Virus record (IMG/VR): IMGVR_UViG_3300042350_004191
Coordinates: 124,001 to 188,000 of that record
Direction: 5' to 3' (one strand)
DNA: 64,000 nucleotides
Shown here: positions 15,187 through 39,548 of the stretch, in pieces
How positions within the stretch are numbered: the stretch's first letter is position 1
Layout: the number at the start of each line of letters is the position of its first letter
Made by a program: the position numbers and the translations under genes
The notes under the pieces: model-generated
Told to the model about the DNA's origin: nothing
What the model saw: only the letters and a program-made list of their open reading frames with translations
The model's database searches: none

Positions 15187-16003
15187 TATAACATTTGTTA
15201 CACATTTAAGGTACGATAATCCAGACAGAATAAGCAATCTTCAAACAATGATTGATTATTACAGTCAAAATTTTCCAGAATCAAAATTTATTTTCGTGGA
15301 AGACGATTATGAACATAATAAAAATTTTGATAAAGTTAAATGGAAAAAAGGATCAACTTCTTATTATTTTTTAAAAAATACAGGGACATATCATAGAACC
15401 AAAGCATTAAATTATGGGTTTAATGAGGCAAAAACACCTATAGTTGTTTCCATGGATACTGATTGTATTGTTTCTAATAAATCTATATTAGAATGCGAAC
15501 AAGAATTGTTGAATGGTGCTACTGCCGCATGGCCTTATAATGGTTATTTTATCGATGTAGATTATAATCTAAAAAACTTCTTCACTCAAAATTCTTTAGA
15601 TTATAATATATTATTATCCAATCTTGATGGATGTTTAGAGTTGCCTATATGTGCATCTTACAAAAATTATTCTGTAAGGTGTACAAGTACAGTTCATTTA
15701 GGTGTAGGTGGAATTGTTATGTTCAACAAAGAACTATTTTTGAAAATAGGAGGTTACAATGAAAATTTTGTAGGTTGGGGCTGTGAAGATAATGAAGTAG
15801 AATATAGGTTAAAAACCTTGAATCAATTATATTATAGAGATAAAGATAAATCGTCTATATGTTTTCATTTATATCATGCACAAGCACAAAGGGCAGAGAA
15901 TCCATTCTATGATAGAAATGGTAAATTGTTAAACGAAATACAAGGAATGGATGAAGCTAATCTTTTGAAACATATATTAACTTGGAAAAATGATAACGTT
16001 TAG
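15176..16003 (+). CDS. GT-A glycosyltransferase (GT2 with GT7 C-terminal-like domain), putative galactosyltransferase
   Basis: RTKALNYG, MDTD (DxD), GGIVMF...IGGYNENFVGWGCEDNE...FHLYH. Confidence 0.82.
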   Translation: MSNNITFVTHLRYDNPDRISNLQTMIDYYSQNFPESKFIFVEDDYEHNKNFDKVKWKKGSTSYYFLKNTGTYHRTKALNYGFNEAKTPIVVSMDTDCIVSNKSILECEQELLNGATAAWPYNGYFIDVDYNLKNFFTQNSLDYNILLSNLDGCLELPICASYKNYSVRCTSTVHLGVGGIVMFNKELFLKIGGYNENFVGWGCEDNEVEYRLKTLNQLYYRDKDKSSICFHLYHAQAQRAENPFYDRNGKLLNEIQGMDEANLLKHILTWKNDNV

Positions 16004-16805
16004 AAATTTAGGAAAACATGGAGAATTCGGAAACCAGCTATTTCAAATAGCTGCTGTTATAGGTACTGCCATCAAAAACAATACAGTTTTTAATTTTCCG
16101 AAATGGCAAGGTTTAATATCTGGAACAGAGTATTCAACATATTTTAAAAATCCAATTCCAGAATCAGTAAACATTAATGACCATTTTGATGTTTATATGG
16201 AGCCATCTTTTTCGTATAACGAGATACCATATCAGATGAATCAAAAATTAGACTTGTTTGGTTATTTTCAAAGCGAAAAGTACTTCTTACACTGTAAAAA
16301 TGAAATTATAAATTTTTTCGAACCTTCAGAATTAATTTTTAAAAAAATAAAAAACTTAGATTATAAAAACTCTGTGAGTTTACAATTAAGGTTTTATGAT
16401 AATAAAAGACAATATTCAAATCACCTTGTTATGAACGATCCTTCGTATGGTGATTTATATTATACAGTTGAAGAGAATATTCCATATTTACAACAAGCTA
16501 TAAATTTTTTTGGGAAAGATAAAAATTATTTTGTAACTACAAATAACTTTGAAAAGGCTAAACAAATGTTTGGTGCTTATAGTAATTTTTATTTTTTGGA
16601 AAAATATTCATATTTAGAACAGTTTTTTATACAAAGTTTGTGCGAGCACAATATTATTACAAATTCGTCTTTTGGGTGGTGGGGTGCTTGGTTAAATAAA
16701 AATTTACATAAAATAGTTTTTGCGCCTTGCTTATGGTTTAAGCCAAATCATAAATCCAAAGAAGAAAGTAAAGATTTATATCCTGAAACTTGGAAAGTTT
16801 TATAA
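15990..16805 (+). CDS. GT11 alpha-1,2-fucosyltransferase-like protein
   Basis: GEFGNQLFQ, GYFQSEKYF, CEHNIITNSSFGWWGAWLN, DLYPETW; HxRRxD replaced by QLRFYD. Confidence 0.85.
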   Translation: MITFRNLGKHGEFGNQLFQIAAVIGTAIKNNTVFNFPKWQGLISGTEYSTYFKNPIPESVNINDHFDVYMEPSFSYNEIPYQMNQKLDLFGYFQSEKYFLHCKNEIINFFEPSELIFKKIKNLDYKNSVSLQLRFYDNKRQYSNHLVMNDPSYGDLYYTVEENIPYLQQAINFFGKDKNYFVTTNNFEKAKQMFGAYSNFYFLEKYSYLEQFFIQSLCEHNIITNSSFGWWGAWLNKNLHKIVFAPCLWFKPNHKSKEESKDLYPETWKVL

Positions 16806-17704
16806 TGAGAAGTTTAGTAACAGGTGGACAAGGATTTATTGGAAGCGTTTTAGTAAAAAAGCTACTAAACGAATGTAAAGATGATGTGATTGTTATTGAT
16901 AATAACAGTTCAAATAACAAAAATAATTTTAATGTTAAAGGAGCCAAATATTACAATGTAGATTTAAATAATTTTGACAAAATATTTCCTTTATTTAAAG
17001 ACGTTGACAGGGTATTTCATTTAGCAGCAGACGTTTCTATAGAGTTTTGTAATAAAAATCCCAGAATATCAGGTATTAATAACTCTAACATAACTCTTAA
17101 TACACTAGAATGTTGTCGATTAAATAAAGTTAAAAAATACATTTATTCGTCAACTTCTGCTGTATATGAACAAAAAAATACTAAATTGAAAGAAACCGAC
17201 AATGTTCGTCCTTTAAATTTATATTCAGCATCCAAATTATTTGGAGAAAATTTATGTAAAATATATTACGACCTTTATGGTGTAGAAACAATTTGTTTGC
17301 GCTATTTTAATGTTTTCGGTTCTTCAATGAAGAAAAGTCCATATTCTTCTGTTTTAGTTAATTTTTTAAATAATGAGTCAGAAAATAAACCATTAATTGT
17401 ACATGGTAATGGTAAACAAACAAGAGATTTTGTATTTGTTGAAGATGTAGCACAAGCAAACATCATAGCATCAACACTAAAATTGAAAAAATATGGTAAG
17501 ATTTACAATATAGGTTCTGGTAAAAGCATGTCTATAATAGACTTAGCAAAAAAAATTTCAAATAATATTACTTTTGTAAAATCACGAAGTGGTGATATAA
17601 AGAATAGTTGTTCTGATATTAAAAGATTAAAAAAAGACTTTAATTGGAAACCTGAAGTGAAAATTGAAAAATGGTTAAATAAAATAATTAAAACAAATGT
17701 ATAA
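16805..17704 (+). CDS. NAD-dependent nucleotide-sugar epimerase/dehydratase (extended SDR, GalE/WbpP-like)
   Basis: VTGGQGFIG, FHLAA, SSTSAVY, YSASK, LRYFNVFG, GNGKQTRDFVFVEDVA; TAATG coupling to GT11 gene. Confidence 0.9.
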   Translation: MRSLVTGGQGFIGSVLVKKLLNECKDDVIVIDNNSSNNKNNFNVKGAKYYNVDLNNFDKIFPLFKDVDRVFHLAADVSIEFCNKNPRISGINNSNITLNTLECCRLNKVKKYIYSSTSAVYEQKNTKLKETDNVRPLNLYSASKLFGENLCKIYYDLYGVETICLRYFNVFGSSMKKSPYSSVLVNFLNNESENKPLIVHGNGKQTRDFVFVEDVAQANIIASTLKLKKYGKIYNIGSGKSMSIIDLAKKISNNITFVKSRSGDIKNSCSDIKRLKKDFNWKPEVKIEKWLNKIIKTNV

Positions 17705-18380
17705 TATAGGTTTATTAATAATAGCGACAAATAAATACATAGATTTTTTAAATCCTTTAATAAAAAGTACAGATAATTATTTTTTAAAAAATCAAAATGT
17801 GAAATATTTTATCTTTACGGATAAAGATATTTCTTTTTTAAAAAGTGAAAGAGAAATTGTAAAAATTCAAACTGAACACAAAGACTGGCCTTGGATGACT
17901 TTAGGTAGATATAAAATTTTTTGTGATAGTAAAAATTTATTATCTAAAATGGATTATCTTTATTATTGTGATGTAGATATGAAATTTGTAGACGAGGTTG
18001 GTGACGAAATTTTAGAACAAATAGTAGCTACACAACATCCAGCTTTACGAGAAACAAGAGGAACTCCAGAAACTAACACAAGTTCTTTAGCGTGTGTTTA
18101 TCCTCACGAAAATATGGAATATTTTGCTGGTGGATTTAATGGCGGTTCTGCTGAACAATTTTTAAAAATGTCTAGTATTTTGTCTAAAAATATAGAAATC
18201 GATTATTTAAATGGAATTATTGCTTTGTGGCATGATGAAAGTCATTTAAATAGATATTTAATAGATAATCCTCCTACAAAAATATTAAGTCCAAGTTATT
18301 GTTACGGGGAAAACATGGAACTACCTTTCCCTAAAAAAATTCTAGCTTTAGACAAAAATCATTTTAAAATAAGATCATGA
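17697..18380 (+). CDS. GT6 alpha-1,3-glycosyltransferase (ABO-transferase family)
   Basis: IATNKY, YFIFTD, YCDVDMKF (DxD), YFAGGFNGG, ALWHDESHLNRYL, KILSPSY. Confidence 0.92.
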   Translation: MYNIGLLIIATNKYIDFLNPLIKSTDNYFLKNQNVKYFIFTDKDISFLKSEREIVKIQTEHKDWPWMTLGRYKIFCDSKNLLSKMDYLYYCDVDMKFVDEVGDEILEQIVATQHPALRETRGTPETNTSSLACVYPHENMEYFAGGFNGGSAEQFLKMSSILSKNIEIDYLNGIIALWHDESHLNRYLIDNPPTKILSPSYCYGENMELPFPKKILALDKNHFKIRS

Positions 18381-19039
18381 AAAAAGGAGTTATACTATAC
18401 CATAACAACATACAAAAATTGTATGATAATAGATGGATTGATAAATGTATACATTCCATGGTAAATCAAACGGATAATGATTTTACTTTTTATGAATTAA
18501 ATTATAACGGAGATTCTAATTCAGTTGTTAAAAACAATTCACAAAAATTAAAATTTTGGTCAAAAAAAATGTCAAATTATGCAGAAGCTATGAATTTTTT
18601 ATTGGATAAATCGTTTAATGATGGGTGTGATTATGTTTTTAATACAAACTTGGACGATTATTATGCATTAAACAGAATATCATCACAATTAGATATGATG
18701 TTAGAACAAGATTTAGATATAGTGAGTAGCGATTTTTCTTACATACAAGAAAGAAAAGAAAATGGTATTTCAGAAGATGTCGTAATTTTATTTAAAAATA
18801 TTGAAAAAAATAATATTAAAGACAATTTAATGAAAAGACATAATGTTATTGCTCATCCATCCGTTTGTTATAATAAAAGATTTTGGTTAGATAATAATAA
18901 CAGATATGATATTAATAAGGTTCCGCAAGAAGATCTAGACTTATGGATTCGCTCAATAAATAATGGTTATAAGTTTGGAATACATGAAAAAGTGTTATTG
19001 TATTATAGAATACATGAAAAACAAAGCAGTCAATCATGA
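18377..19039 (+). CDS. GT2-family glycosyltransferase
   Basis: CIHSMVNQT, NLDDY...RISSQL, IAHPSV, EDLDLWIR, LLYYRIH. Confidence 0.8.
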   Translation: MKKGVILYHNNIQKLYDNRWIDKCIHSMVNQTDNDFTFYELNYNGDSNSVVKNNSQKLKFWSKKMSNYAEAMNFLLDKSFNDGCDYVFNTNLDDYYALNRISSQLDMMLEQDLDIVSSDFSYIQERKENGISEDVVILFKNIEKNNIKDNLMKRHNVIAHPSVCYNKRFWLDNNNRYDINKVPQEDLDLWIRSINNGYKFGIHEKVLLYYRIHEKQSSQS

Positions 19040-19707
19040 ATATATACAATTTTATCGAAAGTAATATAAACAAAAATTCAATTTTTTTTGAAATAGGATC
19101 TCATTTTGGTTCGGATACTCAAAAATTTTCTAAAATAACAAACAAATTACATTGTTTTGAACCAGATCCTAGAAATATAAAAATTTTTAAACATTTGAAT
19201 TCAAATGTACAATTAAACGAGTTTGCAATTTCTGATAAAGACGGTGTATCACAATTTTTTCTTTCTAGTGGCAATGTGTACGAATCAATGTATGGACCTA
19301 CAGAAAATGAATTAATAAACCAAAACGATTGGTCAGCCTCTTCGTCATTAATTTCTCCTAAAAATCATTTTAAAAAAACACCATGGGTTAAATTTGATAA
19401 TACTATAGAAGTCAAAACAAAACGCCTAGATACATATTGTATAGAAAACGATATTAACAATATAGATTTTCTTTGGATGGACGTTCAAGGAGCAGAACTA
19501 AGCGTTATAAAAAGTATGGGAGCCTTCAAAGATAAAATACATTACATTTATACAGAATACAGCAATGAAGAATTGTATGAAAACCAAGGAACTAAAGAAC
19601 AAATTATAGAATTATTGGGCAATTCTTGGAAAGTTTTGTGTGATTTTGGAGGCGATATTTTATTAGAAAACCAAAATTATGATATCAATTACAATACCAG
19701 CATATGA
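19036..19707 (+). CDS. FkbM-family methyltransferase
   Basis: FEIGSHFG, FEPDPRN, AISD, TKRLD, IDFLWMDVQGAEL, IYTE. Confidence 0.88.
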   Translation: MNIYNFIESNINKNSIFFEIGSHFGSDTQKFSKITNKLHCFEPDPRNIKIFKHLNSNVQLNEFAISDKDGVSQFFLSSGNVYESMYGPTENELINQNDWSASSSLISPKNHFKKTPWVKFDNTIEVKTKRLDTYCIENDINNIDFLWMDVQGAELSVIKSMGAFKDKIHYIYTEYSNEELYENQGTKEQIIELLGNSWKVLCDFGGDILLENQNYDINYNTSI

Positions 19708-20350
19708 AATGTGTGGAGTTGGTAGTTCTTTTTTAGAAAAAAATTTACAATTTTTAAGAGATCAAACTTTTAAAAATTTTGAAGTAGTTATATCAGATCA
19801 TAGTATTTCCGATGATATAAAAAATGTTTGTTCTTTATTTAAAGACTTGGACATAAAATATATTAGAAATGAAAAAGATCGTGGAAGTTCTTCGGCTAAT
19901 TTAAACAATGCAATACTTAATTCAAAATATGATATTATTAAATTTTTAATGCAAGACGAATATATTTTTGAGAAAAATACTCTGTTGGATATTAAAAATG
20001 CTTTTCAAAGTGAAAATGTTAATTGGGTTGCTGTAGGTTTTTATAATGGAAATATAGAAGACAAAAGAATACCTTATTATAATGATGCAGTTATATATGG
20101 AAACAATACAATCGGAAGTCCTAGTATTGTTTCCATAAGAAAAACCAAAGATTTAGAGTTATTTAATCCTGAATTGATATGGTTAATGGATTGTGATTAT
20201 TATAAGAGAATTTACAATAAATGGGGTCATCCATTTATTGTAAAAGATTATAAAATTTTCATAAATCACCACCAAAATCAAGTTACTAATATTATAGATA
20301 ATATAAGAAAAGAAAAAGAACATGTTTTTTTAAAAACAATATATAAATAA
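19679..20350 (+). CDS. GT2-family glycosyltransferase
   Basis: ISITIPAYE, QTFKNFEVVISDHS, NLNNAI, FLMQDE, IGSPS, LMDCDYY. Confidence 0.85.
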   Translation: MISITIPAYEMCGVGSSFLEKNLQFLRDQTFKNFEVVISDHSISDDIKNVCSLFKDLDIKYIRNEKDRGSSSANLNNAILNSKYDIIKFLMQDEYIFEKNTLLDIKNAFQSENVNWVAVGFYNGNIEDKRIPYYNDAVIYGNNTIGSPSIVSIRKTKDLELFNPELIWLMDCDYYKRIYNKWGHPFIVKDYKIFINHHQNQVTNIIDNIRKEKEHVFLKTIYK

Positions 20351-20355
20351 GCGAT

Positions 20356-20952
20356 ATGACAAGAACACAGATAATAAACGGATTAATTAAAAAAAATAAC
20401 TATAAAAGTTATTTAGAGATCGGTGTTAATACACCTGAACAACCTGGATATAACTGGTCCAGTGTACAAATAGATTTAAAACACGGTGTTGATCCATTTG
20501 TAGACACGACATTTAAAACTACATCTGATGATTTTTTTAAAAATTACATAAATCAAAAATATGATATTATTTTTGTAGATGGGTTACATTTGTTTGAACA
20601 AGCATATAAAGATATAATAAATTCTTTAAATAATTTAAACGAAAATGGGACTATTGTAGTTCATGACTGTAATCCAATTACTGAAATAACACAACGAAGG
20701 ATCAGGGAATCGAATGAATGGCATGGTGATGTTTGGAAAGCTATTTTAAAGTTAAGATTAGAAAATCCCGATGTTGATATTTCCACAGTAAATGCTGATG
20801 AGGGGTGTGCTATCATTAAAAAAGGTCAACAAACACTATTAGAAGTATCGGAAAATATAGCTGAAGTCTATGATTATTCTTTTTTAGAAAAAAATAGAAA
20901 TAAAATATTAAATTTGATATCTACTGATGAATTTATAAAAAAATATCTTTAA
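20356..20952 (+). CDS. Class I SAM-dependent methyltransferase (Methyltransf_24-like)
   Basis: YLEIGV, GVDP, TSDDFF, YDIIFVDGLH, GTIVVHDCNP, WHGDVWK. Confidence 0.85.
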   Translation: MTRTQIINGLIKKNNYKSYLEIGVNTPEQPGYNWSSVQIDLKHGVDPFVDTTFKTTSDDFFKNYINQKYDIIFVDGLHLFEQAYKDIINSLNNLNENGTIVVHDCNPITEITQRRIRESNEWHGDVWKAILKLRLENPDVDISTVNADEGCAIIKKGQQTLLEVSENIAEVYDYSFLEKNRNKILNLISTDEFIKKYL

Positions 20953-28396: not shown

Positions 28397-28426
28397 AAGG
28401 GGATAGGGCAACCTATCCCCTTTTTT
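28397..28426 (+). terminator. Rho-independent terminator
   Basis: AAGGGGATAGG-gcaa-CCTATCCCCTT plus T tract; GNRA loop. Confidence 0.88.
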
Positions 28427-29864: not shown

Positions 29865-30755
29865 ATGACTAATAAATTATATAAAGTTTTTACCCATGGC
29901 GACTTAGATGGTGCCGTGAGTTTATTATGTTTATTATGGTCGAAACCAGAAGCCACAATAGAATACGAAGAGCTTTATAATAATACAATTGAAGAACGAT
30001 TAATAAGTTATAATCAAAAAACAATTAATAAACCAACAACTATAGTAATGGATTTCTCTTTAAGAGAATCATTTTTAAATTTCGACTCAAATGAATATGT
30101 TTTTATTGATCATCATAAAACTTCAGAAAAATTTGTAGAAAAATTTAAAAACGCTAAAATAATTTATAAAAATAACAATTCAAATACAGGGTTAATATAT
30201 AGCACATTTAATAAATCTCTTAGTTCAATATCAAAAGAACAAAAATATCTTATAGCATTAGCCGATGACTTCGACTCTTATACTTTAAGACTCCCCCATT
30301 CTTATGATTTGAATATTTTATTCTGGACAGAGTACAGAGGTCAGTTTTCTAAGTTTGTTAAGGATTATTCAAACGGATTTAAACCATTTACCGAAAAACA
30401 AATAAAATTGATCAATTTTGAAAAGAACAGTGCTTGTGAACAATCTCATAAACTTCAAAAGTATGAAGGATCTGTAACTATTAAAGGAGAAAAATATAAA
30501 ACACTAGCAGTTATAGGAGAAAAATATAATAATTTAGTGATCGATTGCTTAATAAGAGAGAATGATCCAGATTTATTTTTTTACATAAACACAAAATCGG
30601 AAAAAGTTAATCTTAGAAAAAAATCTTCGATAACATCTTTTGATTTAGGAACATTTGCAGAGAAAATATGTGAAGGTGGTGGTAACACCAACTCTGCTGG
30701 TGGAAAACTAACACCGTTATTTATGGAGTTGACAAAAAATTTAAAACCTGTATGA
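29865..30755 (+). CDS. DHH-family phosphoesterase
   Basis: THGDLDG, MDFS, FIDHH, C-terminal GGGNTNSAGG (DHHA1-like). Confidence 0.82.
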   Translation: MTNKLYKVFTHGDLDGAVSLLCLLWSKPEATIEYEELYNNTIEERLISYNQKTINKPTTIVMDFSLRESFLNFDSNEYVFIDHHKTSEKFVEKFKNAKIIYKNNNSNTGLIYSTFNKSLSSISKEQKYLIALADDFDSYTLRLPHSYDLNILFWTEYRGQFSKFVKDYSNGFKPFTEKQIKLINFEKNSACEQSHKLQKYEGSVTIKGEKYKTLAVIGEKYNNLVIDCLIRENDPDLFFYINTKSEKVNLRKKSSITSFDLGTFAEKICEGGGNTNSAGGKLTPLFMELTKNLKPV

Positions 30756-31047: not shown

Positions 31048-31698
31048 TTGAATATAACCGAAAAACAAAAACAGATATATAATTGCTACCTTAAACATTT
31101 ACGTAAAGGTCAGCCATACAATCCTAGAAAAAATTTTGATGACCTCAATGGTCAAACAAAAATAGATCTGTATAAACTTCAAAACTTTTTTAATAAATTT
31201 AAACAAATTAGAATGGATTTCTTTTTTGAAGCATTTGCATTTGTTTACCCGAATGACGATTATCCTCAATTGTCTTTTTTTTGTACCAGAAAAGCATTAA
31301 AGTGTTATTCCTTGTATAAGGAGCATAAAGAAAACCAATCACCAGATACGATGTTGGACGATATTAAGAAGAGCGTAATTTTTATTGGCTCATTTTGTAT
31401 GAGAAATAACATTCTTATGCAGAAGTATTTGAAACATAAAACATTATGTATTCCTACATGGATTAAACACTATAAAGAAGGAAACATAAACATATATGCA
31501 GTAATAGCATTGGGATATTCTAATGAATTGAATTCTTTACAAGAAGATGAAAGAGAACTATGGGTCCCAAACCTGTTACAAAATATAACATCTTATAAAA
31601 TAAGATATAGTAATTGTAAATCTAAAGTTAAGATTATCAAATGGTTAGAAACTACTGAAAATTTTGTCAAAAAGAATTTGACTTTCGTTGCAGACTGA
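31048..31698 (+). CDS. gp59-like helicase loader
   Basis: 216 aa, immediately upstream of gp32; IYNCYLKH, ALKCYSLY, LDDIKKSVIF, WIKHYKEGNIN resemble gp59 blocks; TTG start. Confidence 0.55.
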   Translation: MNITEKQKQIYNCYLKHLRKGQPYNPRKNFDDLNGQTKIDLYKLQNFFNKFKQIRMDFFFEAFAFVYPNDDYPQLSFFCTRKALKCYSLYKEHKENQSPDTMLDDIKKSVIFIGSFCMRNNILMQKYLKHKTLCIPTWIKHYKEGNINIYAVIALGYSNELNSLQEDERELWVPNLLQNITSYKIRYSNCKSKVKIIKWLETTENFVKKNLTFVAD

Positions 31699-31706
31699 TT
31701 TAATAT
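31678..31706 (+). promoter_or_regulatory. Sigma70-type promoter for gp32
   Basis: TTGACT-17-TAATAT, 11 nt before ATG 31718. Confidence 0.65.
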
Positions 31707-31717
31707 ATAACAAAATT

Positions 31718-32605
31718 ATGAACAAATACTCAAACAACCTATTCGAATCCATCAAAGACGCACTCAATAAGAAAACAACTAACACAGAGAGCAGTTTTAA
31801 GGATTTTATGAAGACAGAAATGAACAAAACATATATTGTTCGTTTACTTCCAAATGTGGAATCTCCAGACAGAACATTTTTCCATTATTTTCATCATATG
31901 TGGAAAAGCGTATTAACAAATAATATGATTTCTTTTCTTTGTCCCACAACCTATGGGGAAAAATGTCCTCTCGAAGAATATAGAGGAAAGGCATATCGCA
32001 GTAAAAATGAAGCAGAGATTGAGAAAACAAGACCAATCAAAAGAAACGAATCTTGGCTTGCCAATGTTTATGTTATTAAAGATCCAACAAATCCTGAAAA
32101 TGAGGGTAAAGTAAAAATCCTCCGTTTCGGTAAGCAACTTAATAAAATTATCACTGATGCTATTTCCGGTGATGAAAGCGAAGAATTTGGTCCAAAAATC
32201 TTTGATTTATCTGAAAATGGTTGTAATTTTAAGATTAAAGTAGATTCAAATGAAGGCGGTTATCCAACATATGTTAGTTCAAAGTTTATGACACCTTCAA
32301 AACTCGAAGAGATCACTAATCCAGATGAAGTATATGCACAAGTTAAACAACTTGATAAAATCTTCACTCAAAAATCTTATGAAGAGATTAAAGAATTGTT
32401 GGATGTTCACTTCCTTGGCTTAGAGAAGGAAGAAAAGCCTTCTATTAATCAGCAGAAACCAGTCCATGAAGAAATTCCTGAAATTAATTCGATGGTTGAA
32501 GTAGAGTCTACTGATAACTCAAATAAATCAGAAGCCAAAGTAGATTCTATAGGAGATATTGATGATGCTGATGCAAAGATTGAAGAAATTCTTAAAGGTT
32601 TGTAA
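31718..32605 (+). CDS. 32: Single-stranded DNA-binding protein gp32
   Basis: VRLLP, CPTTYGEKCP, ANVYVIKDPTNPENEGKVKILRFGK, FDLSENGCNFKIK, YPTYVSSKF, acidic tail. Confidence 0.92.
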   Translation: MNKYSNNLFESIKDALNKKTTNTESSFKDFMKTEMNKTYIVRLLPNVESPDRTFFHYFHHMWKSVLTNNMISFLCPTTYGEKCPLEEYRGKAYRSKNEAEIEKTRPIKRNESWLANVYVIKDPTNPENEGKVKILRFGKQLNKIITDAISGDESEEFGPKIFDLSENGCNFKIKVDSNEGGYPTYVSSKFMTPSKLEEITNPDEVYAQVKQLDKIFTQKSYEEIKELLDVHFLGLEKEEKPSINQQKPVHEEIPEINSMVEVESTDNSNKSEAKVDSIGDIDDADAKIEEILKGL

Positions 32606-32609
32606 GAAT

Positions 32610-33428
32610 ATGCCTGTCAAAAAATCCAAAGAAGACATTCTTTATACTGAAAAGAACGTTTCGAAAAACACACCACATCTTATACAAATAGGATGTGGTG
32701 ATGTTCATATACCAATTTCTGTTTTAAGAAAAGACGGTTCTACTAATTTTTCACAGGCTATTGTTAATGTGATGGTAGATTTGAATCCATCAGTAAATGG
32801 ATCTAATATTTCAAAAATTTTAAAGATCCTTAATAAGGACGATCATTATACATTCGAAACATTAATTGATTCTTTATTAAGAAACATCGATGAATTTAAA
32901 ATTTATGATAAACAAATCAAAATCAATCTTGATTTTATGTATTTCTTAAGAAAGAAAGCATTAGTTTCTAAAAAAGAGTCTTGGGTTGGATTTAAAACTA
33001 CATTCACAGTCCAAAAAATAGAGGAAAACATCAATTATTTTCTTAAAGTATACGTTCCATATGCATCTGTGTGTCCTACATCTAAAGAAATATCTGATTA
33101 TGGAGCACACAATCAAAGATCATTAGCTGAAATTGAAGTTCAATTAACTAACTTGGATGATAAAAAAGAATTTTGGGTCGAGGATATTGTATATTTGATA
33201 GATCATTGTGTATCTTGTCCTGTTTTTAATGTCATTGAACTTGAGGATGAAGCGTTCCAAACAGAGATGATGTATGAAAACCCAATGTTTGTCGAGGAAG
33301 TTGCAACAAAAATAGCAAAAAGCCTAGATAAACACAAAGACAAACACATTAAAAGCTATAATTTTGTCTTAAATCATTATGAAAGCATAAATGATTATAC
33401 GGTAAAGGCTATTTTACAAAACAATTAA
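32610..33428 (+). CDS. folE2: Divergent FolE2 (GTP cyclohydrolase IB)-like T-fold protein
   Basis: YFLRKKALVS, SVCPTSKEISDYGAHNQRS, WVEDIV, YENPMFVEE, HYESI; several conserved residues substituted. Confidence 0.8.
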   Translation: MPVKKSKEDILYTEKNVSKNTPHLIQIGCGDVHIPISVLRKDGSTNFSQAIVNVMVDLNPSVNGSNISKILKILNKDDHYTFETLIDSLLRNIDEFKIYDKQIKINLDFMYFLRKKALVSKKESWVGFKTTFTVQKIEENINYFLKVYVPYASVCPTSKEISDYGAHNQRSLAEIEVQLTNLDDKKEFWVEDIVYLIDHCVSCPVFNVIELEDEAFQTEMMYENPMFVEEVATKIAKSLDKHKDKHIKSYNFVLNHYESINDYTVKAILQNN

Positions 33429-33432
33429 CAAT

Positions 33433-33816
33433 ATGAATACAGAAACAAACGATTTAGCTATGTTAGCAGGTATGGTGAAGGGTAATATGAGAAAAATAGA
33501 CTCTTTAATGGCCGATAGACCTGATCGACCAGCAGACAATATTGATATTAGAAACTTTATCAATGAACCTAGAGTCGAAACATTACCGACAATCACAACA
33601 AATTTACCGCAACAACAGGTTTATGTAGAACAATCTGCTATTCACACACCACAACCACAAATATCACAAATTACACACCATAATGATGACCAAATTAAGC
33701 AAGATATTGAATCTATTAAGTTGACTTTGGAGAAGATTAATGTTAATCTTACAAAACTCACAGGAATGTTTGGAAAAGTGTTTCAGAGTTTAACCAAGGG
33801 CAATAAAAATGGATAA
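33433..33816 (+). CDS. Hypothetical protein with C-terminal coiled coil
   Basis: 127-aa ORF within operon. Confidence 0.65.
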   Translation: MNTETNDLAMLAGMVKGNMRKIDSLMADRPDRPADNIDIRNFINEPRVETLPTITTNLPQQQVYVEQSAIHTPQPQISQITHHNDDQIKQDIESIKLTLEKINVNLTKLTGMFGKVFQSLTKGNKNG

Positions 33817-34555
33817 AATATGTTTTGAAAAGGATTTTTTAGTTAAAATACTTAAAACAATCAATAGATTGTGTGATAGTTGTGTTCTTAAAATAGAGAA
33901 CAATCGAATATATTCAGTTACATCATCAAGTGACAATGTAATTGTACTGTATATTAATGGTGAATTAGTAGAAAATACTAATTTTACTGGTAAAATCAAT
34001 ATCATTGATATTAAAAGATTTTTGTGTGGCTTGGATTGTTTAGATAGTCAAAAAATTGAAATACAATTTAATGATAACTATATTAAATGTGTAACAAAAG
34101 ATAGTAATGATCCAACTCATGTAAAATATCATCTTGTTGATGATAGTGTAATGAGCAAATCTACTTTTAATATTAAGAAAATAACACAACTAACGTTTGA
34201 TACAGAATTTTCTATACCTTTAAGTGTCCAGAAAAAAATTATAACAGCTTACTCTTTCTCTGCTGACTGTCAGAAGGTTTATTTAAAGGAAAGTGAAGGT
34301 AGTATTTACGCAGAAATTAATGATCTAACTCAACACAATAAAGATAGTGTAGAGTTAAAAATTACAGATGAATACAAAGGAGATTTAATAAAGCAACCAA
34401 TTCCTATAAACATTGAAATATTCAAAAATTTGATGTACACAAAAAATAGCAATATACAAGTAAAAATAAATAACGAATATAAAGTATTAATTTTTAATGT
34501 AAAAGAAGATGATACAATAGACGTAAAATATATCATATCAGCACTTGTTAAATAA
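33809..34555 (+). CDS. 45: DNA polymerase sliding clamp gp45-like
   Basis: 248 aa with two-fold alpha/beta clamp pattern (LKTINRL..SCVLK, NIIDIKRFL, KYHLVD, VKYIISALV) in replication module. Confidence 0.65.
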   Translation: MDKICFEKDFLVKILKTINRLCDSCVLKIENNRIYSVTSSSDNVIVLYINGELVENTNFTGKINIIDIKRFLCGLDCLDSQKIEIQFNDNYIKCVTKDSNDPTHVKYHLVDDSVMSKSTFNIKKITQLTFDTEFSIPLSVQKKIITAYSFSADCQKVYLKESEGSIYAEINDLTQHNKDSVELKITDEYKGDLIKQPIPINIEIFKNLMYTKNSNIQVKINNEYKVLIFNVKEDDTIDVKYIISALVK

Positions 34556-35292: not shown

Positions 35293-36090
35293 ATGGATTT
35301 TATTAGAAACCCAAGCAATCCAGATATATGTGAATTGCCTAAAGTCTTACCTGATTTTTCTAAGTTTCCAGGTATTACCTCAAATTTAAATAACTTAAGC
35401 GCAAGTATAGAACCTTGGCTTTGCGAAATATTAAAGATTGCAGGAGATGAAAGTAAAGACCCTGTATTAAGACCGGGTAATGAACCGGATTACAGTCCGT
35501 TCTTTGATTCATTAACTGGAATGAAGGGAGTTGGAGATCCTAGAGTTGATTTAGGATTTGTCATGACAAAAACTTTGGAAAAATATTTGCCACTATTAGA
35601 TGTTAAATTGAAAGTTCTCCAAGAGGGTTGTCAAATTATAGAAGAAACCTTGTGCGATAGTGACGGAAAACCTGTATATAAATTAAAGAGTGACTGTGAT
35701 TATGGCGAGGAAATAACATTTGATAGCGTTGCACAGTTTACTCAAAATATTTGGGAAGAAGAAACAACTAAAGCAGCCAATTCTTTTGCTGATTTTATTA
35801 AAAGAACATATGTAGACAAAAACTGGAGCGTAGAGCTTTATGCTATGGGTGATGGTAATCTACTAAAAATTGCTAGAGGACAAAGTATACCGATCTTTTA
35901 TGTGAGAGCATCATCAGGTAATCAGATAAAGTTTCACAAATATTATTTTGATGCTAGAGAAAAAGTATCTAAAGCTCTCAATATTAAATTGAATATAAAA
36001 GATTATAATTTGTTTAACAACGTTAACAATTTTCAAGAAAATACACAATTAATGCAAGTTTTAAGTGGCCCTTATTGGCCTGAGAACTAA
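35293..36090 (+). CDS. Hypothetical protein
   Basis: 265-aa ORF, convergent with gp5. Confidence 0.7.
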   Translation: MDFIRNPSNPDICELPKVLPDFSKFPGITSNLNNLSASIEPWLCEILKIAGDESKDPVLRPGNEPDYSPFFDSLTGMKGVGDPRVDLGFVMTKTLEKYLPLLDVKLKVLQEGCQIIEETLCDSDGKPVYKLKSDCDYGEEITFDSVAQFTQNIWEEETTKAANSFADFIKRTYVDKNWSVELYAMGDGNLLKIARGQSIPIFYVRASSGNQIKFHKYYFDAREKVSKALNIKLNIKDYNLFNNVNNFQENTQLMQVLSGPYWPEN

Positions 36091-39000
36091 CATTTTGTAT
36101 CATCGACTATAATATCAATATTACCATCTGGTAAGCGTTTAAATCTGATATTGCTGCTTTGTAAACGTGTATTTGTAAAACCGGGTACTTTATCTCCGAT
36201 TCCGAAGGAATTCATTTTGTTATAATTGAAACGGCGACCACCAGAACCACCACCCCAACCACCAAATCCACCGCAACCAGCCAATGTTTTAGGACCACCA
36301 TCAGGCCCCTGACCATTGCTTCTTGCTTTGGTTGGAATAGGTCCCGGTTCTACCGCAGAATTCCTTACACCCTGAACATCATCATAATAATTCCCCTTTG
36401 GTTGAGTGTAATCATGATGGTGAGGTTTTGGATCTTCTAATTGATTATGATGCCAGTTCCAGATCCAGCCCCAAGAAACACCCGGTCCTGCTGCATTACA
36501 ACAAAAACCCAAATACAATCCAGTAGGCACTGGTTCAATTACTGTATTGATATAAATTGTATTATAAATTTGCATAACAGCTTTAACAATGTTTGTGAGG
36601 TTTAGCATAGCACCCGGCATTGCATAGTGTGTTAAAGCTGTCCTTACAGTATTTAAAATATCATTAGTCTGTGCAGGGCCAGTTGCCCAAGTTGTAAAAG
36701 GTATTCTTTGATCTGGTGAACTTCCTTGGTCTGATTGGGTTCGTTGTCCAACTGTATTTAAAAACGGCACAGACAACTCTCCATCCAATCTCATCCCACC
36801 AACAACACCTACGTTTCCGGTTGCACTAAATCCTTTGCAAACCATAGTGGGTGAATTTATTTCCACACCACCTTTATTAGTCCTATCATTTGCGTCTATG
36901 GTAACTACTCTACCTTTTAAAGTAGTATGATTTTTTGATCCGAAAACCATTTCACCGTCTGAAGCTAAAAGTTCAACAGAACCACAATTTAATTTTAATC
37001 TTCCTTTAGTATTTAATTCTATGCCAGCAGCACCAGCAACTATTTGTACAGAATTTCCGCCACGCAACATAAGATTACCGGGTAAATTGATCGGTGGGGT
37101 ATAAACAACGTTTTTTATTTCAGCAGATTTATGCCTTTGTGCAATGGTTTGTCCATCATTTGATTTTGTTTGTGTACCAACAGAAACTGACTTATTAACA
37201 GTTTCTGCATAACATGGCGCATCGTTCATTCCTCCGGGTAATCCAGCAGAAATCACAACATCTTTTGATGCTGTAACTGTAAAACTTCCACCATTTCCTA
37301 ACTGTTGTTCTGCATCAGCAATTTCTTTTTGTTTACTTGATAACTTTTTAGCCGCTTCTTTATTTGCATTTTCTATGGGTTTTTGTGGTGAAGGTATTTC
37401 GCCTTTATCACAATCAGGATTACCACATTTACCTAAGACATGCCCCGGTACAACCGAAGTAAATGGAACTAATATTAATCCCAATAAAAATTGGAAAACG
37501 TCTATAGCATACGAAAAATAAGGTGGTAATAAATTTCTTAAAAAGTTAAATGCTCTTTTTGCAAAACTTGATGCTCTGTCCACAGCATATGATGTGGAAC
37601 ATAAAGGACACGGAACTTTTTCTCCGCTTTTTGCTGTATTTTTTATCTGTTCTACTTTTTCTTTTTGAACAGTTTCGGTTATAGTTTTTAATTTTTCTAT
37701 AGCAGCTATTTCTTTATCCGTCATTCTACCAGCATTTATAAAAATATCTGACTCAACATCTGTATGAGATGTTGTGCCTATTCTTGCATTATAAGAGCCT
37801 CCTAATGATGTAAAAGCATCTGCTCTAGATTGAATATTTAAAGTATCTTGAGCTACCAATGACGTACCAGCACCATGAACCATTAAACCAGATCCTCTAG
37901 CCAACACTTCAAAAGAACTTGTATCTGTTATTAAATTTCCATCTTTTAATTTTGTATCGGTCATTGACATTTTAACTGGGCCTGATGCAAAAACGTTACC
38001 AACTCTAGCTGAATCTACATCAAGACCAATAACCGAATCAGAACCTGTTTGTATCATTTTTTTCATTGTTTCGGGTTCCAATGAATTTGCAAAATATATA
38101 GGTTTTTGAATGTCACCAGCTAAAAAGAATACAAATACTTTTGCACCAGGAAATGGTATCGATATCATTCCTGATGCTTGATCACCAGCAAGACCAGGAT
38201 CCGTTATCGGAGCATGAAAATTCGGGTTTGGAGAAGTTTGTGATCCTCCTCTAGCAGCAGCATAACCTGTTTTACCCTCTAATACATCACCCTTCCCTGC
38301 TGCTATTAAATCTTCAGCGGCAGATGCACCGGGTGGCACAGTACCATATTTTGCAAGCTGTGCTTTGACATCTTCAGCACTTTTACCTATCGTAGATTCT
38401 CTCCCTAAAACTTCAAAATTTACATTACTTACAGTATTATTAACGTTATACGTACTTCGATCAACATACATGTCTATTGTAGATCCTTGATTTGAATTTC
38501 CGTGTACGTCTGAAACTATATATACATAATTTGTTCTAGTATCTCGAATCACAGTTCCTACTGGTAAAAATTTATTATTTTGTGGAACTGCAATGATGCC
38601 TGGTGTTAGATTTTGTCCTTGAGAAGAATATCCTTTAGAAGTCCAAGAATCTGTTGTTTCATCGCCTACTGTTGTATATTGAAATACTTTGTCAGCAACA
38701 AAACTTCCTTGAACTTCTGGAGATTCTGTTGTTGTTGCGTCTTTTACTTCCAGACTTCCTTCGGTTGCTGTACTATGTGGATTTACTGTTGTTCCAGCAA
38801 CACTTTCGGATGGTTGCGTTATATCACCTCCATAATTCGGATCGAATTTGCCGTGTAAAATCTCAAATCGTCTACCATCGGGTAATTCAAATGTAGCTCT
38901 ATCTCCTACTTCTCCATTTTTAAATGTCATAGAAGAATTGTCTACCCATCTAGCTCCATTACTAAGAGTTAATGCTGCCTGTCTATTACCAAAAGCAAAA

Positions 39001-39548
39001 TCCCATCCACTGTGAGTACGTGTTCCCCCGTCCCTAGATGCATAAAAAGTTCCACCTGATGTAGTGGTTCCAGATGAAAGAGGGCTACCATCTACTTGTA
39101 CATATTGGTCTAAATCAGTTCTTTCAAAAAATCCTCTACCAACTTGTTTAATATCATAATGGCCTATTTTATTACGGGGTGATCCTATTTTTCCTTGTAT
39201 ATAAGCACCTTTTTGTGGATCTGTTACAGGAAAAGTTCTACCAGCATATGTGTCAGTTATACCTGTATTTGGATTATATGTCGCAGAAGTACCTCCACCA
39301 AATATAGGACTAGCACATTCAGCCCAAGGTAAAACAGTTTTTAATTCTTCTACTAATTCAGGAGTTAATGAACCAGAATCATGAATATGTTTGAAATTTT
39401 TGTTACTTAAATCTTTATTCCAACCAGCATGTAAAGTATTTGTTAAATAAGGAATCCATATTTGTACACGGCCTCTGAATTCTGGATCTTTATTATTAAC
39501 AACAATTCCTAAATGATTACCATAAATTGGTTCTTTTGAGAGACTCAT
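36087..39548 (-). CDS. 5: Baseplate central spike gp5-like protein with inserted peptidoglycan-active domains
   Basis: Gp5 OB fold GIVVNNKDPEFRGRVQIWIP...LPWAE...IPFPGAKVFVFFLAGDIQKPIYF; beta-helix-like repeats; M23-like HSGWD and 3D-like IAVP...SD..G...IDMY inserts. Confidence 0.82.
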   Translation of the reverse strand: MSLSKEPIYGNHLGIVVNNKDPEFRGRVQIWIPYLTNTLHAGWNKDLSNKNFKHIHDSGSLTPELVEELKTVLPWAECASPIFGGGTSATYNPNTGITDTYAGRTFPVTDPQKGAYIQGKIGSPRNKIGHYDIKQVGRGFFERTDLDQYVQVDGSPLSSGTTTSGGTFYASRDGGTRTHSGWDFAFGNRQAALTLSNGARWVDNSSMTFKNGEVGDRATFELPDGRRFEILHGKFDPNYGGDITQPSESVAGTTVNPHSTATEGSLEVKDATTTESPEVQGSFVADKVFQYTTVGDETTDSWTSKGYSSQGQNLTPGIIAVPQNNKFLPVGTVIRDTRTNYVYIVSDVHGNSNQGSTIDMYVDRSTYNVNNTVSNVNFEVLGRESTIGKSAEDVKAQLAKYGTVPPGASAAEDLIAAGKGDVLEGKTGYAAARGGSQTSPNPNFHAPITDPGLAGDQASGMISIPFPGAKVFVFFLAGDIQKPIYFANSLEPETMKKMIQTGSDSVIGLDVDSARVGNVFASGPVKMSMTDTKLKDGNLITDTSSFEVLARGSGLMVHGAGTSLVAQDTLNIQSRADAFTSLGGSYNARIGTTSHTDVESDIFINAGRMTDKEIAAIEKLKTITETVQKEKVEQIKNTAKSGEKVPCPLCSTSYAVDRASSFAKRAFNFLRNLLPPYFSYAIDVFQFLLGLILVPFTSVVPGHVLGKCGNPDCDKGEIPSPQKPIENANKEAAKKLSSKQKEIADAEQQLGNGGSFTVTASKDVVISAGLPGGMNDAPCYAETVNKSVSVGTQTKSNDGQTIAQRHKSAEIKNVVYTPPINLPGNLMLRGGNSVQIVAGAAGIELNTKGRLKLNCGSVELLASDGEMVFGSKNHTTLKGRVVTIDANDRTNKGGVEINSPTMVCKGFSATGNVGVVGGMRLDGELSVPFLNTVGQRTQSDQGSSPDQRIPFTTWATGPAQTNDILNTVRTALTHYAMPGAMLNLTNIVKAVMQIYNTIYINTVIEPVPTGLYLGFCCNAAGPGVSWGWIWNWHHNQLEDPKPHHHDYTQPKGNYYDDVQGVRNSAVEPGPIPTKARSNGQGPDGGPKTLAGCGGFGGWGGGSGGRRFNYNKMNSFGIGDKVPGFTNTRLQSSNIRFKRLPDGNIDIIVDDTKC

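What the first reader, a model, noticed from the sequence alone, without database searches (positions are those of the whole stretch)
32610..33428. FolE2 homologue that has lost conserved basic/His residues: pseudoenzyme or new substrate
Seen versus recalled FolE2 consensus: KGTHMSR becomes NGSNISK, CPCS becomes CPTS, LLKRPDE becomes VIELEDE, and ESIHNH becomes ESINDY. The first Cys, GAHNQR His and the T-fold Glu are kept. The ORF is full length and lies between gp32 and gp45, with no queD/E/C or dpdA in the window. Known: phage folE genes usually feed folate or 7-deazaguanine DNA modification. Inference: the basic-to-acidic swaps argue against GTP triphosphate binding, suggesting a different substrate, a nucleotide-signal binder, or a dominant-negative subunit that poisons the host oligomer.
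Basis: partly seen in the sequence, partly recalled or inferred. Interest (0 to 1): 0.68.

Follow-up and report, generated by a model that had tools for sequence, protein, structure and literature searches.

The report
Orphaned FolE2 relic in a lake phage
This phage gene is the leftover first enzyme of a DNA-modification (7-deazaguanine) pathway that the phage has otherwise lost; it has shed the residues needed to act on GTP, yet selection still keeps it intact, so it now probably does a different, unknown job.

Summary
It lies 4 nt after gp32 and upstream of a fold-confirmed sliding clamp.

The gene directly after gp32 is a syntenic core gene of a large group of uncultured freshwater T4-like phages.
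- In most of them (clade B) it keeps CPCS, LKR and ESIH and is extremely conserved (omega about 0.03). It co-occurs with DpdA3, QueD, QueC, a QueE-like gene and sometimes QueF/DpdN, a 7-deazaguanine DNA-modification pathway.
- The window's lineage (clade C; genome 99% complete) has none of these genes.
- Its FolE2 copy has lost 25 of 53 family-invariant residues, including the second Cys, Lys-Arg and the ESIH His.
- It evolves about 4-fold faster relative to gp41.
- It is still under purifying selection (omega 0.10-0.17), even in a sub-lineage whose metal-ligand Glu became Lys (0.08).
- A second lineage (clade D) appears to have lost the pathway independently and replaced the same residues.

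Best reading: an orphaned FolE2 that is no longer a GTP cyclohydrolase I and is kept for an undetermined new role. This is a new variant of a known kind, of moderate interest.

The parts
31688..32605 (+). gp32-type single-stranded-DNA-binding protein. Its stop codon lies 4 nt before the FolE2-like start.
   Evidence: phrog_224 E 1.4e-42. PF08804 in orthologues. Sequence junction read.
32610..33428 (+). FolE2-like (GCYH-IB family, bimodular T-fold) orphan protein, 272 aa (P0001).
   Evidence: PF02649 E 1.4e-50. Below the NCBIfam FolE2 equivalog cut-off. AlphaFold pLDDT 90.5; Foldseek top hits are FolE2 structures with TM 0.77-0.89.
32637..32702 (+). Remodelled N-terminal segment. The family-invariant Asp12 and Gln14 are replaced (Tyr12, Glu14). 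Lys15, His23 and Cys29 are new invariants specific to clade C.
   Evidence: Column counts; clade-specific invariants; coordinates.
32796..32816 (+). NGSNISK loop, in place of KGTHMSR (Arg69 lost).
33072..33119 (+). CPTSKEISDYGAHNQR. Metal ligands Cys155 and His167 are kept; the second Cys (Cys156 in B. pseudomallei numbering) is replaced by Thr157. This loop is nearly invariant in all clades.
33231..33251 (+). VIELEDE, in place of LLKRPDE. Lys is lost (position variable in the clade), Arg->Leu is fixed in the clade, and the metal-ligand Glu214 is kept here.
33285..33299 (+). That it anchors the purine/pterin ring is an assignment from general T-fold knowledge, not tested here.
   Evidence: Invariant in alignments A1, A2 and A3.
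33381..33398 (+). ESINDY, in place of ESIHNH. Glu258 (the proposed general base) is kept; His->Asn is fixed in clade C.
33433..33816 (+). Conserved 127-aa protein of unknown function. It always lies between the FolE2-like gene and the clamp gene and evolves fast.
   Evidence: No Pfam or PHROG hit. Syntenic in clades B, C and D. omega 0.15-0.35.
33809..34555 (+). Sliding clamp (gp45/PCNA fold).
   Evidence: AlphaFold pLDDT 86.6; Foldseek matches PCNA structures with TM about 0.7. No sequence-level hit.

Best explanation
The gene is an orphaned, re-purposed FolE2. In the ancestors of this phage the gene directly after gp32 encoded a working GTP cyclohydrolase IB. That enzyme supplied dihydroneopterin triphosphate to a phage-encoded 7-deazaguanine DNA-modification pathway (QueD, QueE, QueC, sometimes QueF and the formyltransferase DpdN, and the transglycosylase DpdA3).

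The window's lineage lost the rest of that pathway but kept this gene. Freed from its old job, the protein lost the residues implicated in the GTP reaction: the second Cys of CPC and its partner Arg, several basic residues that I infer bound the triphosphate, the N-terminal Asp/Gln pair, and the ESIH His. It began to evolve several-fold faster.

It is nevertheless kept intact by purifying selection. It retains the T-fold scaffold, the Cys/His(/Glu) site, the invariant Glu229 and the SKEISDYGAHNQ loop. It has also fixed new residues at former catalytic positions (Tyr12, Leu211, Asn261, plus Lys15, His23, Cys29).

I therefore infer that it no longer makes dihydroneopterin triphosphate. It most likely works through a remodelled inter-subunit pocket that binds, or performs limited hydrolysis on, a guanine- or pterin-like compound without a triphosphate. 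It is expressed together with the replication genes.

Shown here: homology, fold, residue losses, pathway loss, synteny and selection regimes. Inferred: loss of cyclohydrolase activity. Speculative: the nature of the new ligand or role.
For: 1. Family and fold: PF02649 E 1.4e-50; model TM 0.77-0.89 to FolE2 structures.

2. Synteny: the FolE2-type gene lies immediately after gp32 in essentially all of about 90 related loci of clades B, C and D.

3. Pathway co-occurrence. In clade B records: QueD 11/11, QueC 8/11 (3/3 complete genomes), a DpdA3 homologue 11/11, and weak radical-SAM hits beside QueD in some. [quoted passage not shown] That phage's DNA carries fdPreQ1 (PMC10516641). In clade C records, including the 99%-complete G000, all of these score 0. 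The syntenic slots are empty (DpdA3 within 10 kb of FolE2 in 36/43 B loci, 0/17 C loci, 0/3 D loci).

4. Residues: of 53 positions invariant in canonical plus clade B proteins, clade C keeps 28 and changes 25. Residue mapping to B. pseudomallei FolE2: metal ligands C154/H166/E208, C156 with R205, E250 base, H253 (PMC11573665).

5. Selection. FolE2 omega median is 0.027 in B and 0.172 in C, while gp41 and gp32 stay at 0.05-0.12. Amino-acid distance relative to gp41 is 0.53x in B and 2.27x in C. Window-lineage pairs give omega 0.10-0.16.

6. The pocket is still constrained. The segment 153-171 has entropy 0.33 in clade C, equal to canonical FolE2. Twelve clade-specific invariants include R->L, H->N and D->Y at formerly invariant positions.

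7. Phage backbone tree (gp41+gp32): clades C and D are each monophyletic (support 1.0) and nested separately among clade B phages. Both replaced C157, K210, R211, R69 and Q14. Clade D's copy is then strongly constrained: 84-89% identical where gp41 is 75-82%, omega about 0.09-0.10.
Against: - No biochemical data exist for any clade, so loss of activity is inferred.
- The three metal ligands and the proposed general base are all present in the window's protein, so some GTP-directed chemistry cannot be excluded.
- Clade B proteins already lack the KGTHMSR His, and most lack the second HNH His, yet sit in a full pathway. The family therefore tolerates some 'invariant' losses.
- A sub-lineage of clade C (P0122-P0125; L148-L150) replaced the metal-ligand Glu by Lys and is still under purifying selection (omega 0.08). 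This argues that the retained function may not need the metal site at all and fits a non-catalytic role better.
- The continuing fast evolution in clade C (2.3x gp41) could mean only weak residual constraint.
- Clade C and D records other than G000 are 18-61% complete, so genome-wide absence rests mainly on G000 plus the syntenic slots.
- The roles I assign to the lost basic residues (triphosphate binding) come from inference and from memory of papers not held in the library.
Confidence: 0.55

Rival explanations
1. A purely non-catalytic pseudoenzyme. The T-fold oligomer is kept as a structural or regulatory partner of the replication or nucleotide-supply machinery (for example associated with gp32). 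The conserved 'active-site' residues survive only because the Cys/His/Glu site bridges subunits and stabilises the oligomer.
For: - The position directly after gp32 is invariant in every clade, apart from the other pathway genes.
- The metal site is built from two subunits (PMC11573665), so its ligands can be structural.
- The Glu->Lys sub-lineage is still under purifying selection (omega 0.08).
- Several former catalytic positions are freely variable: 157 T/V/A and 210 N/E/S/D/H.
Against: - New residues are fixed at former catalytic positions (L211, N261, Y12), and the substrate-side loop is nearly invariant. This is more than a scaffold needs.
- There is no evidence of any partner.
- Gene neighbourhood alone is weak evidence for binding.
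Confidence: 0.2
2. It is still a GTP cyclohydrolase I with an unusual active site. It supplies dihydroneopterin triphosphate to host folate or queuosine synthesis during infection.
For: - The metal ligands C155/H167/E214, the proposed base E258 and the invariant E229 are present.
- FolE-only viruses are known and are attributed to folate metabolism (PMC6884629).
- Clade B shows that the KGTHMSR His is dispensable in a pathway context, and so is the second HNH His in most members.
Against: - The second Cys of CPC and its Arg are gone. The PNAS 2024 paper reports them as proposed catalytic elements, and by my recollection of Paranagama et al. 2017, which is not held, the Cys is essential.
- Four conserved basic residues and the ESIH His are gone.
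- If the chemistry were unchanged, the constraint should resemble clade B. Instead omega rose about 6-fold and the rate relative to gp41 about 4-fold.
- The score is below the FolE2 equivalog cut-off.
- One sub-lineage has lost the Glu ligand.
Confidence: 0.12
3. A dominant-negative subunit that co-assembles with the host's FolE2 and shuts down host pterin or queuosine synthesis.
For: FolE2 active sites lie at subunit interfaces (PMC5699537; PMC11573665), so a defective subunit could in principle poison a mixed oligomer. Fast evolution could reflect tracking of a host protein.
Against: - The host is unknown, and it is not known whether it uses FolE2.
- The protein is only about 30% identical to cellular FolE2, and its surface evolves fast. 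That makes a conserved hetero-interface unlikely.
- No benefit to the phage is evident.
- Nothing here tests it.
Confidence: 0.05
4. A decaying gene with no protein-level function, kept open by chance or because its DNA carries signals for the downstream clamp gene.
For: Large loss of family-invariant residues and an accelerated rate.
Against: - The ORF is intact in every one of about 27 distinct clade C sequences spanning synonymous divergence well above 1.
- omega is 0.08-0.17.
- The active-site loop is invariant.
- Clade D's copy is more conserved than gp41.
Confidence: 0.03

Closest known systems
Bacterial GTP cyclohydrolase IB (FolE2; N. gonorrhoeae 3D2O/5K95, B. pseudomallei 8G6C, N. europaea 2R5R)
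   Same: Same Pfam family and the same bimodular T-fold (TM 0.77-0.89, 28-30% identity). Same Cys/His/Glu metal triad, same ESI Glu, same SKEISDYGAHNQR loop.
   Different: Lacks the second Cys of CPC, the Lys-Arg before DE, the ESIH His, Arg69, Arg233 and the N-terminal Asp/Gln. Scores below the FolE2 equivalog cut-off. No folate or queuosine gene context. Encoded in a phage replication module.
Clade B FolE2 of sister T4-like freshwater phages (e.g. P0018, P0052; records G006-G016)
   Same: Orthologous position directly after gp32, same length, shared phage-specific motif DEAYQTExMYENP. The phage proteins group together in the tree with support 0.88-0.92.
   Different: Clade B keeps CPCS, LKR and ESIH. 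It is very strongly conserved (omega 0.027; 70% identity where gp41 is 45%). It co-occurs with DpdA3, QueD and QueC, with weak QueE-like hits in some, and with QueF/DpdN in some. The window's protein has none of this.
[quoted passage not shown]
   Same: The ancestral pathway to which this gene belonged. The clade B genome G006 has DpdA3-DpdN-kinase-QueF in the same order, at 34-46% identity (PMC10516641).
   Different: The Flavobacterium phage's GTP cyclohydrolase gene is annotated FolE, whereas these phages use FolE2. The window's phage has lost every component except the FolE2 relic.
T-fold and pathway enzymes that changed function (QueF and QueF-L related to FolE; QueC-family proteins reused in anti-phage defence)
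   Same: Precedents for enzymes of this very pathway being re-purposed while keeping the fold and part of the pocket (PMC5699537; titles and abstracts listed).
   Different: Those cases have defined new activities. Here the new activity, if any, is unknown.

Membership tests
GTP cyclohydrolase IB / FolE2 (PF02649, EC 3.5.4.16) | Sequence match to the family profile above the curated threshold | tested here: met
   PF02649 scores 172.7 bits against a cut-off of 25, covering profile positions 12-258 of 260.
GTP cyclohydrolase IB / FolE2 (PF02649, EC 3.5.4.16) | Score above NCBI's isofunctional (equivalog) cut-off for FolE2 | tested here: not met
   NF010200 scores 168.5 bits against a cut-off of 215.
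GTP cyclohydrolase IB / FolE2 (PF02649, EC 3.5.4.16) | Bimodular T-fold structure | tested here: met
   AlphaFold pLDDT 90.5. Foldseek top ten hits are all FolE2 structures, TM 0.77-0.89, rmsd about 2.5 A.
GTP cyclohydrolase IB / FolE2 (PF02649, EC 3.5.4.16) | Metal-binding triad Cys/His/Glu (C154, H166, E208 in B. pseudomallei) | tested here: met
   C155, H167 and E214 are present in the window's protein. The Glu is replaced by Lys in the related sub-lineage P0122-P0125.
GTP cyclohydrolase IB / FolE2 (PF02649, EC 3.5.4.16) | Second Cys of CPCS (S-nitrosylated, proposed catalytic) and its partner Arg of LKRPDE | tested here: not met
   Thr157 and Leu211 in the window. Across clade C the first position is T/V/A and the second is Leu in 19/19 sequences.
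GTP cyclohydrolase IB / FolE2 (PF02649, EC 3.5.4.16) | Conserved His of ESIH (H253 in B. pseudomallei) and general-base Glu (E250) | tested here: inconclusive
   The Glu is kept (E258). The His is replaced by Asn261, fixed across clade C.
GTP cyclohydrolase IB / FolE2 (PF02649, EC 3.5.4.16) | Family-invariant basic and polar residues (R69, K210, R233, D12, Q14) | tested here: not met
   All five are replaced in clade C; 25 of 53 invariant positions are changed overall. Their role in triphosphate binding is inferred, not shown.
GTP cyclohydrolase IB / FolE2 (PF02649, EC 3.5.4.16) | Conversion of GTP to 7,8-dihydroneopterin triphosphate | not testable with these tools
   Needs an enzyme assay or folE complementation.
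Phage 7-deazaguanine DNA-modification system (Dpd/Que) | A DpdA-family transglycosylase in the genome | tested here: not met
   PF01702 gives no hit. A DpdA3 homologue is absent from G000 and from 5 other clade C records, but present in 11/11 clade B records.
Phage 7-deazaguanine DNA-modification system (Dpd/Que) | The preQ0 synthesis genes QueD, QueE and QueC | tested here: not met
   PF01242, PF06508 and PF04055 give no hit in G000. tblastn with the G006 and Flavobacterium-phage proteins is also negative.
Pseudoenzyme / re-purposed enzyme homologue | Loss of residues required for the parent reaction, together with purifying selection on the protein | tested here: met
   Residue losses; omega 0.08-0.17. 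Whether the protein is truly inactive cannot be tested here.

The most novel reading that the evidence does not exclude
Phage FolE2 has a second role that does not depend on 7-deazaguanine synthesis. In two independent lineages that dropped the DNA-modification pathway, it became a dedicated non-cyclohydrolase T-fold protein with a new ligand or reaction. One example would be binding or destroying a guanine- or 7-deazaguanine-derived base or signal, possibly as a counter-defence or as a replication-linked nucleotide function. If so, this is a new functional subfamily of the T-fold superfamily.
Probability: 0.25. Interest if true: 0.75.

Novelty: new variant of a known kind. Interest (0 to 1): 0.55.

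Why it matters
1. It is a natural experiment on which FolE2 residues serve the GTP reaction. Two lineages that no longer need that reaction independently discarded the same set (second Cys of CPC, Lys-Arg, Arg69, Gln14), while keeping the metal triad, the purine-side loop and the fold.

2. It shows an enzyme of the 7-deazaguanine pathway surviving the loss of that pathway under selection. That implies an unrecognised second function for a T-fold protein encoded in the core replication module of a widespread group of lake phages.

3. As a by-product, it identifies a large uncultured T4-like group whose members use FolE2 together with DpdA3 (and in some, QueF and DpdN), and so probably carry heavily modified guanines. 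Close relatives lack the system altogether, which makes them useful for studying gain and loss of DNA hypermodification.

4. For annotation, these proteins should not be named 'GTP cyclohydrolase I' by homology alone.

Tried and rejected
- The papers with the detailed FolE2 mechanism (Paranagama 2017; Sankaran 2009) are not held. Residue roles are taken from PMC11573665 or marked as recollection.
- PHROGs gave no meaningful family for the protein.
- The cultured-phage collection holds no close relative. The best tblastn hit is 27% identical, and the DNA polymerase is only about 30% identical to those of cyanophages.
- The pelagimyophage paper does not mention the gene.
- Loci from ENA/Logan/NCBI contigs could not be searched as whole records, so whole-record tests used IMG/VR records only.
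- Pfam TGT does not detect DpdA3. DpdA3 was found instead through the Flavobacterium phage DpdA.
- A 333-aa ORF beside QueD/QueE in G006 was tried as a DpdA candidate and had no match.
- The promoter and terminator scan around the gene is at chance level (53 found against 50 expected). It shows only a strong terminator upstream of gp41 at 28397-28422.
- Homodimer prediction of the protein gave no verdict (score 0.16). It is not evidence either way.
- No RNA run holds the locus, so expression is untested.
- Considered and rejected: that the gene belongs to an intact deazaguanine or folate pathway in this genome, and that it is a dying pseudogene.
Full report
**Observation.** Window 32610-33428 (+) is an intact 272-aa ORF (P0001). 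Its ATG lies 4 nt after the stop of the upstream gp32-type gene, and the next ORF starts 4 nt after its own stop. It matches Pfam PF02649 (FolE2, GTP cyclohydrolase IB) at E 1.4e-50 over nearly the whole profile. The best solved relatives are the FolE2 structures 2r5r, 8g6c and 3d2o.

- KGTHMSR -> NGSNISK
- CPCS -> CPTS
- LLKRPDE -> VIELEDE
- ESIHNH -> ESINDY

The first Cys, the GAHNQR His, the DE Glu, the FVEx Glu and the ESI Glu are retained. An AlphaFold model (pLDDT 90.5) superposes on FolE2 structures with TM 0.77-0.89. The protein scores below NCBI's isofunctional FolE2 cut-off (168.5 against 215 bits).

**Residue roles.** The B. pseudomallei FolE2 paper (PMC11573665) gives the following:
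- C154, H166 and E208 (from a neighbouring subunit) are the metal ligands.
- C156 is the S-nitrosylated Cys proposed to act in catalysis, stabilised by R205.
- E250 is the proposed base, and H253 is a conserved His.

The spacings in the motifs match this numbering. The window's protein therefore keeps the metal triad (C155, H167, E214) and the base (E258), but has Thr for C156, Leu for R205 and Asn for H253. By my recollection of Paranagama et al. 2017, which is not held in the library, the second Cys is essential for the cyclohydrolase reaction.

**Genome and habitat.** The window is part of a 210,586-bp virus record that CheckV rates 99% complete. The DNA polymerase is only about 30% identical to that of any cultured T4-like phage. 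The locus occurs in lake and freshwater metagenomes from about 20 studies. The flanks are a replication module:
- helicase (gp41)
- DHH phosphoesterase
- two unknown genes
- gp32 (phrog_224)
- the FolE2-like gene
- an unknown 127-aa gene
- a 248-aa protein with no sequence-level hit, whose model is a PCNA-type sliding clamp

**Relatives fall into classes.** A word-based search found 131 relatives, and IMG/VR scans gave about 90 loci. The motifs sort them as follows:
- **A**: canonical FolE2, with KGTHMSR / CPCS / LKRPDEK / ESIHNH.
- **B**: many phage sequences, with KG[TA]NMSR / CPCS / LKRxDEAY / ESIH.
- **C**: the window's clade, with NGSNISK-like / CP[TVA]S / xLxDEA[FY] / ESIN.
- **D**: KGSLIN / CPRS / ISDLDES / GAHSQL / ESIH.

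In clades B, C and D the gene sits directly after gp32 in T4-like contigs. It is therefore one syntenic, vertically inherited phage gene. In the family tree the phage proteins group together (support 0.88-0.92). Clade C is monophyletic (support 1.0) on a long stem of 0.96 substitutions per site. Clade D has its own long stem of 1.2.

**The key comparison.** I searched whole IMG/VR records for pathway genes.

| Gene | Clade B (11 records, 3 complete) | Clade C (G000 plus 4-5 partial records) |
|---|---|---|
| QueD | 11/11 | 0/5 |
| QueC | 8/11 (3/3 complete) | 0/5 |
| Radical-SAM (QueE-like) | weak hits beside QueD in some | 0/5 |
| QueF-like | 4/11 | 0 by Pfam in the 4 partial records; G000 negative by tblastn |
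| DpdA3 homologue | 11/11 | 0/6 |

- Pfam TGT finds nothing in any clade. That is expected, because DpdA3 is only a distant TGT relative (PMC10516641).
[quoted passage not shown] QueD and QueE also match. That phage's DNA carries 7-(formylamino)methyl-7-deazaguanine.
- G000 also lacks FolE type IA. tblastn with the Flavobacterium-phage pathway proteins finds nothing in G000 or G002.
- The syntenic slots are simply closed. In G006, QueD/QueE lie between two genes that are adjacent in G000 and G002.
- Within 10 kb of the FolE2 gene, DpdA3 is found in 36/43 B loci, 0/17 C loci (11 distinct contigs) and 0/3 D loci.

The window's gene is thus the only survivor of a phage 7-deazaguanine DNA-modification pathway.

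**Selection.**
- In clade B, FolE2 is the most conserved of the four genes compared. It is 70% identical where gp41 is 45%, gp32 43% and DpdA3 41%. Median omega is 0.027, against 0.082 for gp41 and 0.116 for gp32.
- In clade C the order flips. Median omega is 0.172, against about 0.05 for gp41 and gp32. Amino-acid distance is 2.27 times that of gp41, against 0.53 times in clade B. For the window against its nearest relatives, omega is 0.10-0.16.

The protein is therefore much less constrained than its enzymatic ancestor, but it is clearly not neutral.

**What was lost and what was kept.** Of 53 positions invariant in canonical plus clade B proteins, clade C keeps 28 and changes 25.
- Some former key positions now vary: 157 (T/V/A), 210 (N/E/S/D/H), 14, 69 and 233.
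- Others are fixed to new residues: D12->Y, R211->L and H261->N. There are further clade-specific invariants (K15, H23, C29, N59).
- The loop around CPxSKEISDYGAHNQ is as conserved in clade C as in cellular FolE2 (entropy 0.33).

**A sub-lineage without the Glu ligand.** In P0122-P0125 (loci L148-L150) the metal-ligand Glu is Lys (LQDKA). The ORF is intact, in the same position, and a pair with unsaturated dS gives omega 0.08.

**A second, independent case.** On a gp41+gp32 backbone tree, clades C and D are each monophyletic (support 1.0) and nested separately among clade B phages.
- Clade D also lacks DpdA3, QueD and QueC in its records (25-35% complete) and at the syntenic site.
- It has replaced the same residues (C157->R, K210->S, R211->D, R69, Q14) but kept D12 and the ESIH His.
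- Within clade D the protein is again tightly conserved: 84-89% identical where gp41 is 75-82%, omega about 0.09-0.10. That pattern looks like a burst of change followed by a new constraint.

**Interpretation.**
- *Shown*: homology, fold, loss of specific residues, loss of the whole pathway, conserved synteny, a shift in selection regime, and an independent repeat.
- *Inferred*: the protein no longer makes dihydroneopterin triphosphate. The residues lost convergently are those that served the GTP reaction, namely the Cys-Arg pair and probable triphosphate-binding basic residues.
- *Proposed*: it is retained for a different function that still uses the T-fold oligomer and a remodelled inter-subunit pocket. 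The most likely role is binding or limited processing of a guanine- or pterin-like molecule without a triphosphate.

The Glu->Lys sub-lineage and the inter-subunit nature of the metal site keep a purely structural role in play. Continued cyclohydrolase activity, a dominant-negative role against a host enzyme, and simple decay are less likely, for the reasons given under the rival explanations.

**Comparison with what is known.**
- FolE singletons in phages were noted but set aside in the 2019 survey (PMC6884629).
- That survey does not mention FolE2 at all, and a full-text search (FolE2, phage, T-fold, pseudoenzyme) returned no paper whose title or abstract describes a degenerate phage FolE2.
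- The protein is a member of the PF02649 superfamily by sequence and fold. It fails the tests for an isofunctional FolE2.
- I rate it a new variant of a known kind.

**Limits.**
- There is no biochemistry, and no RNA evidence of expression.
- The partial records limit genome-wide absence claims outside G000.
- dS is near saturation for many pairs.
- Omega was estimated pairwise (Nei-Gojobori) rather than with branch models.
- The 3D positions of the new invariant residues could not be examined.
- The homodimer prediction gave no verdict.

Noticed in passing
window 15176-20952 (+): A 6-kb island of eight genes for glycan synthesis: family 2, 6, 7C and 11 glycosyltransferases, an NAD-dependent epimerase/dehydratase, and FkbM-type and other methyltransferases. 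It is mostly absent from the related genomes G002 and G006. It may be involved in host-surface or virion glycosylation.
   Followed up: partly
related records G006-G016 (e.g. L101:5467-7414, L102:6600-8154, L094:11259-12589): Sister T4-like lake phages (clade B) carry a 7-deazaguanine DNA-modification gene set. It has a DpdA3-type transglycosylase, uses FolE2 instead of FolE, and in some records (e.g. G006) includes QueF and a DpdN-like formyltransferase. A GATase-like gene and a DUF366 gene lie beside QueC. They probably have heavily modified guanines.
   Followed up: partly
L148:9761-10570, L149:771-1586, L150:4221-5036: A sub-lineage of the window's clade has replaced the metal-ligand Glu by Lys (LQDKA), with accompanying changes (YEKP, E[NG]IN). 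The gene is still intact and under purifying selection, omega 0.08.
   Followed up: yes
L009:10001-10831, L112, L113: A second, independently derived orphan form (clade D: CPRS, ISDLDES, GAHSQL). It is more conserved than the helicase within its clade. ThyX occupies the slot next to the DNA polymerase in L009.
   Followed up: partly
window 29865-30755 (+): A DHH-family phosphoesterase (phrog_4771 E 3.6e-12; DHH/DHHA1 Pfam hits in orthologues) is conserved between the helicase and gp32 in clades B2, C and D.
   Followed up: no
window 33433-33816 (+): A 127-aa protein with no family hit is always wedged between the FolE2-type gene and the clamp gene. It is the fastest-evolving gene of the block, omega 0.15-0.35.
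   Followed up: no
window 36087-39548 (-): A 1153-aa baseplate hub/spike-like protein. Orthologues carry faint Phage_base_V hits plus lysozyme or M15 peptidase domains.
   Followed up: no
window 28397-28422 (+): A strong intrinsic-terminator-like hairpin (11 pairs, 6 G-C, T-run) lies just upstream of the helicase gene. Only one short, weak + strand match (5-pair stem, 35486-35499) follows before the strand switch at about 36090, which suggests one long transcription unit that includes the FolE2-like gene.
   Followed up: no
window 1-64000: ARAGORN finds no tRNA genes in the window.
   Followed up: no
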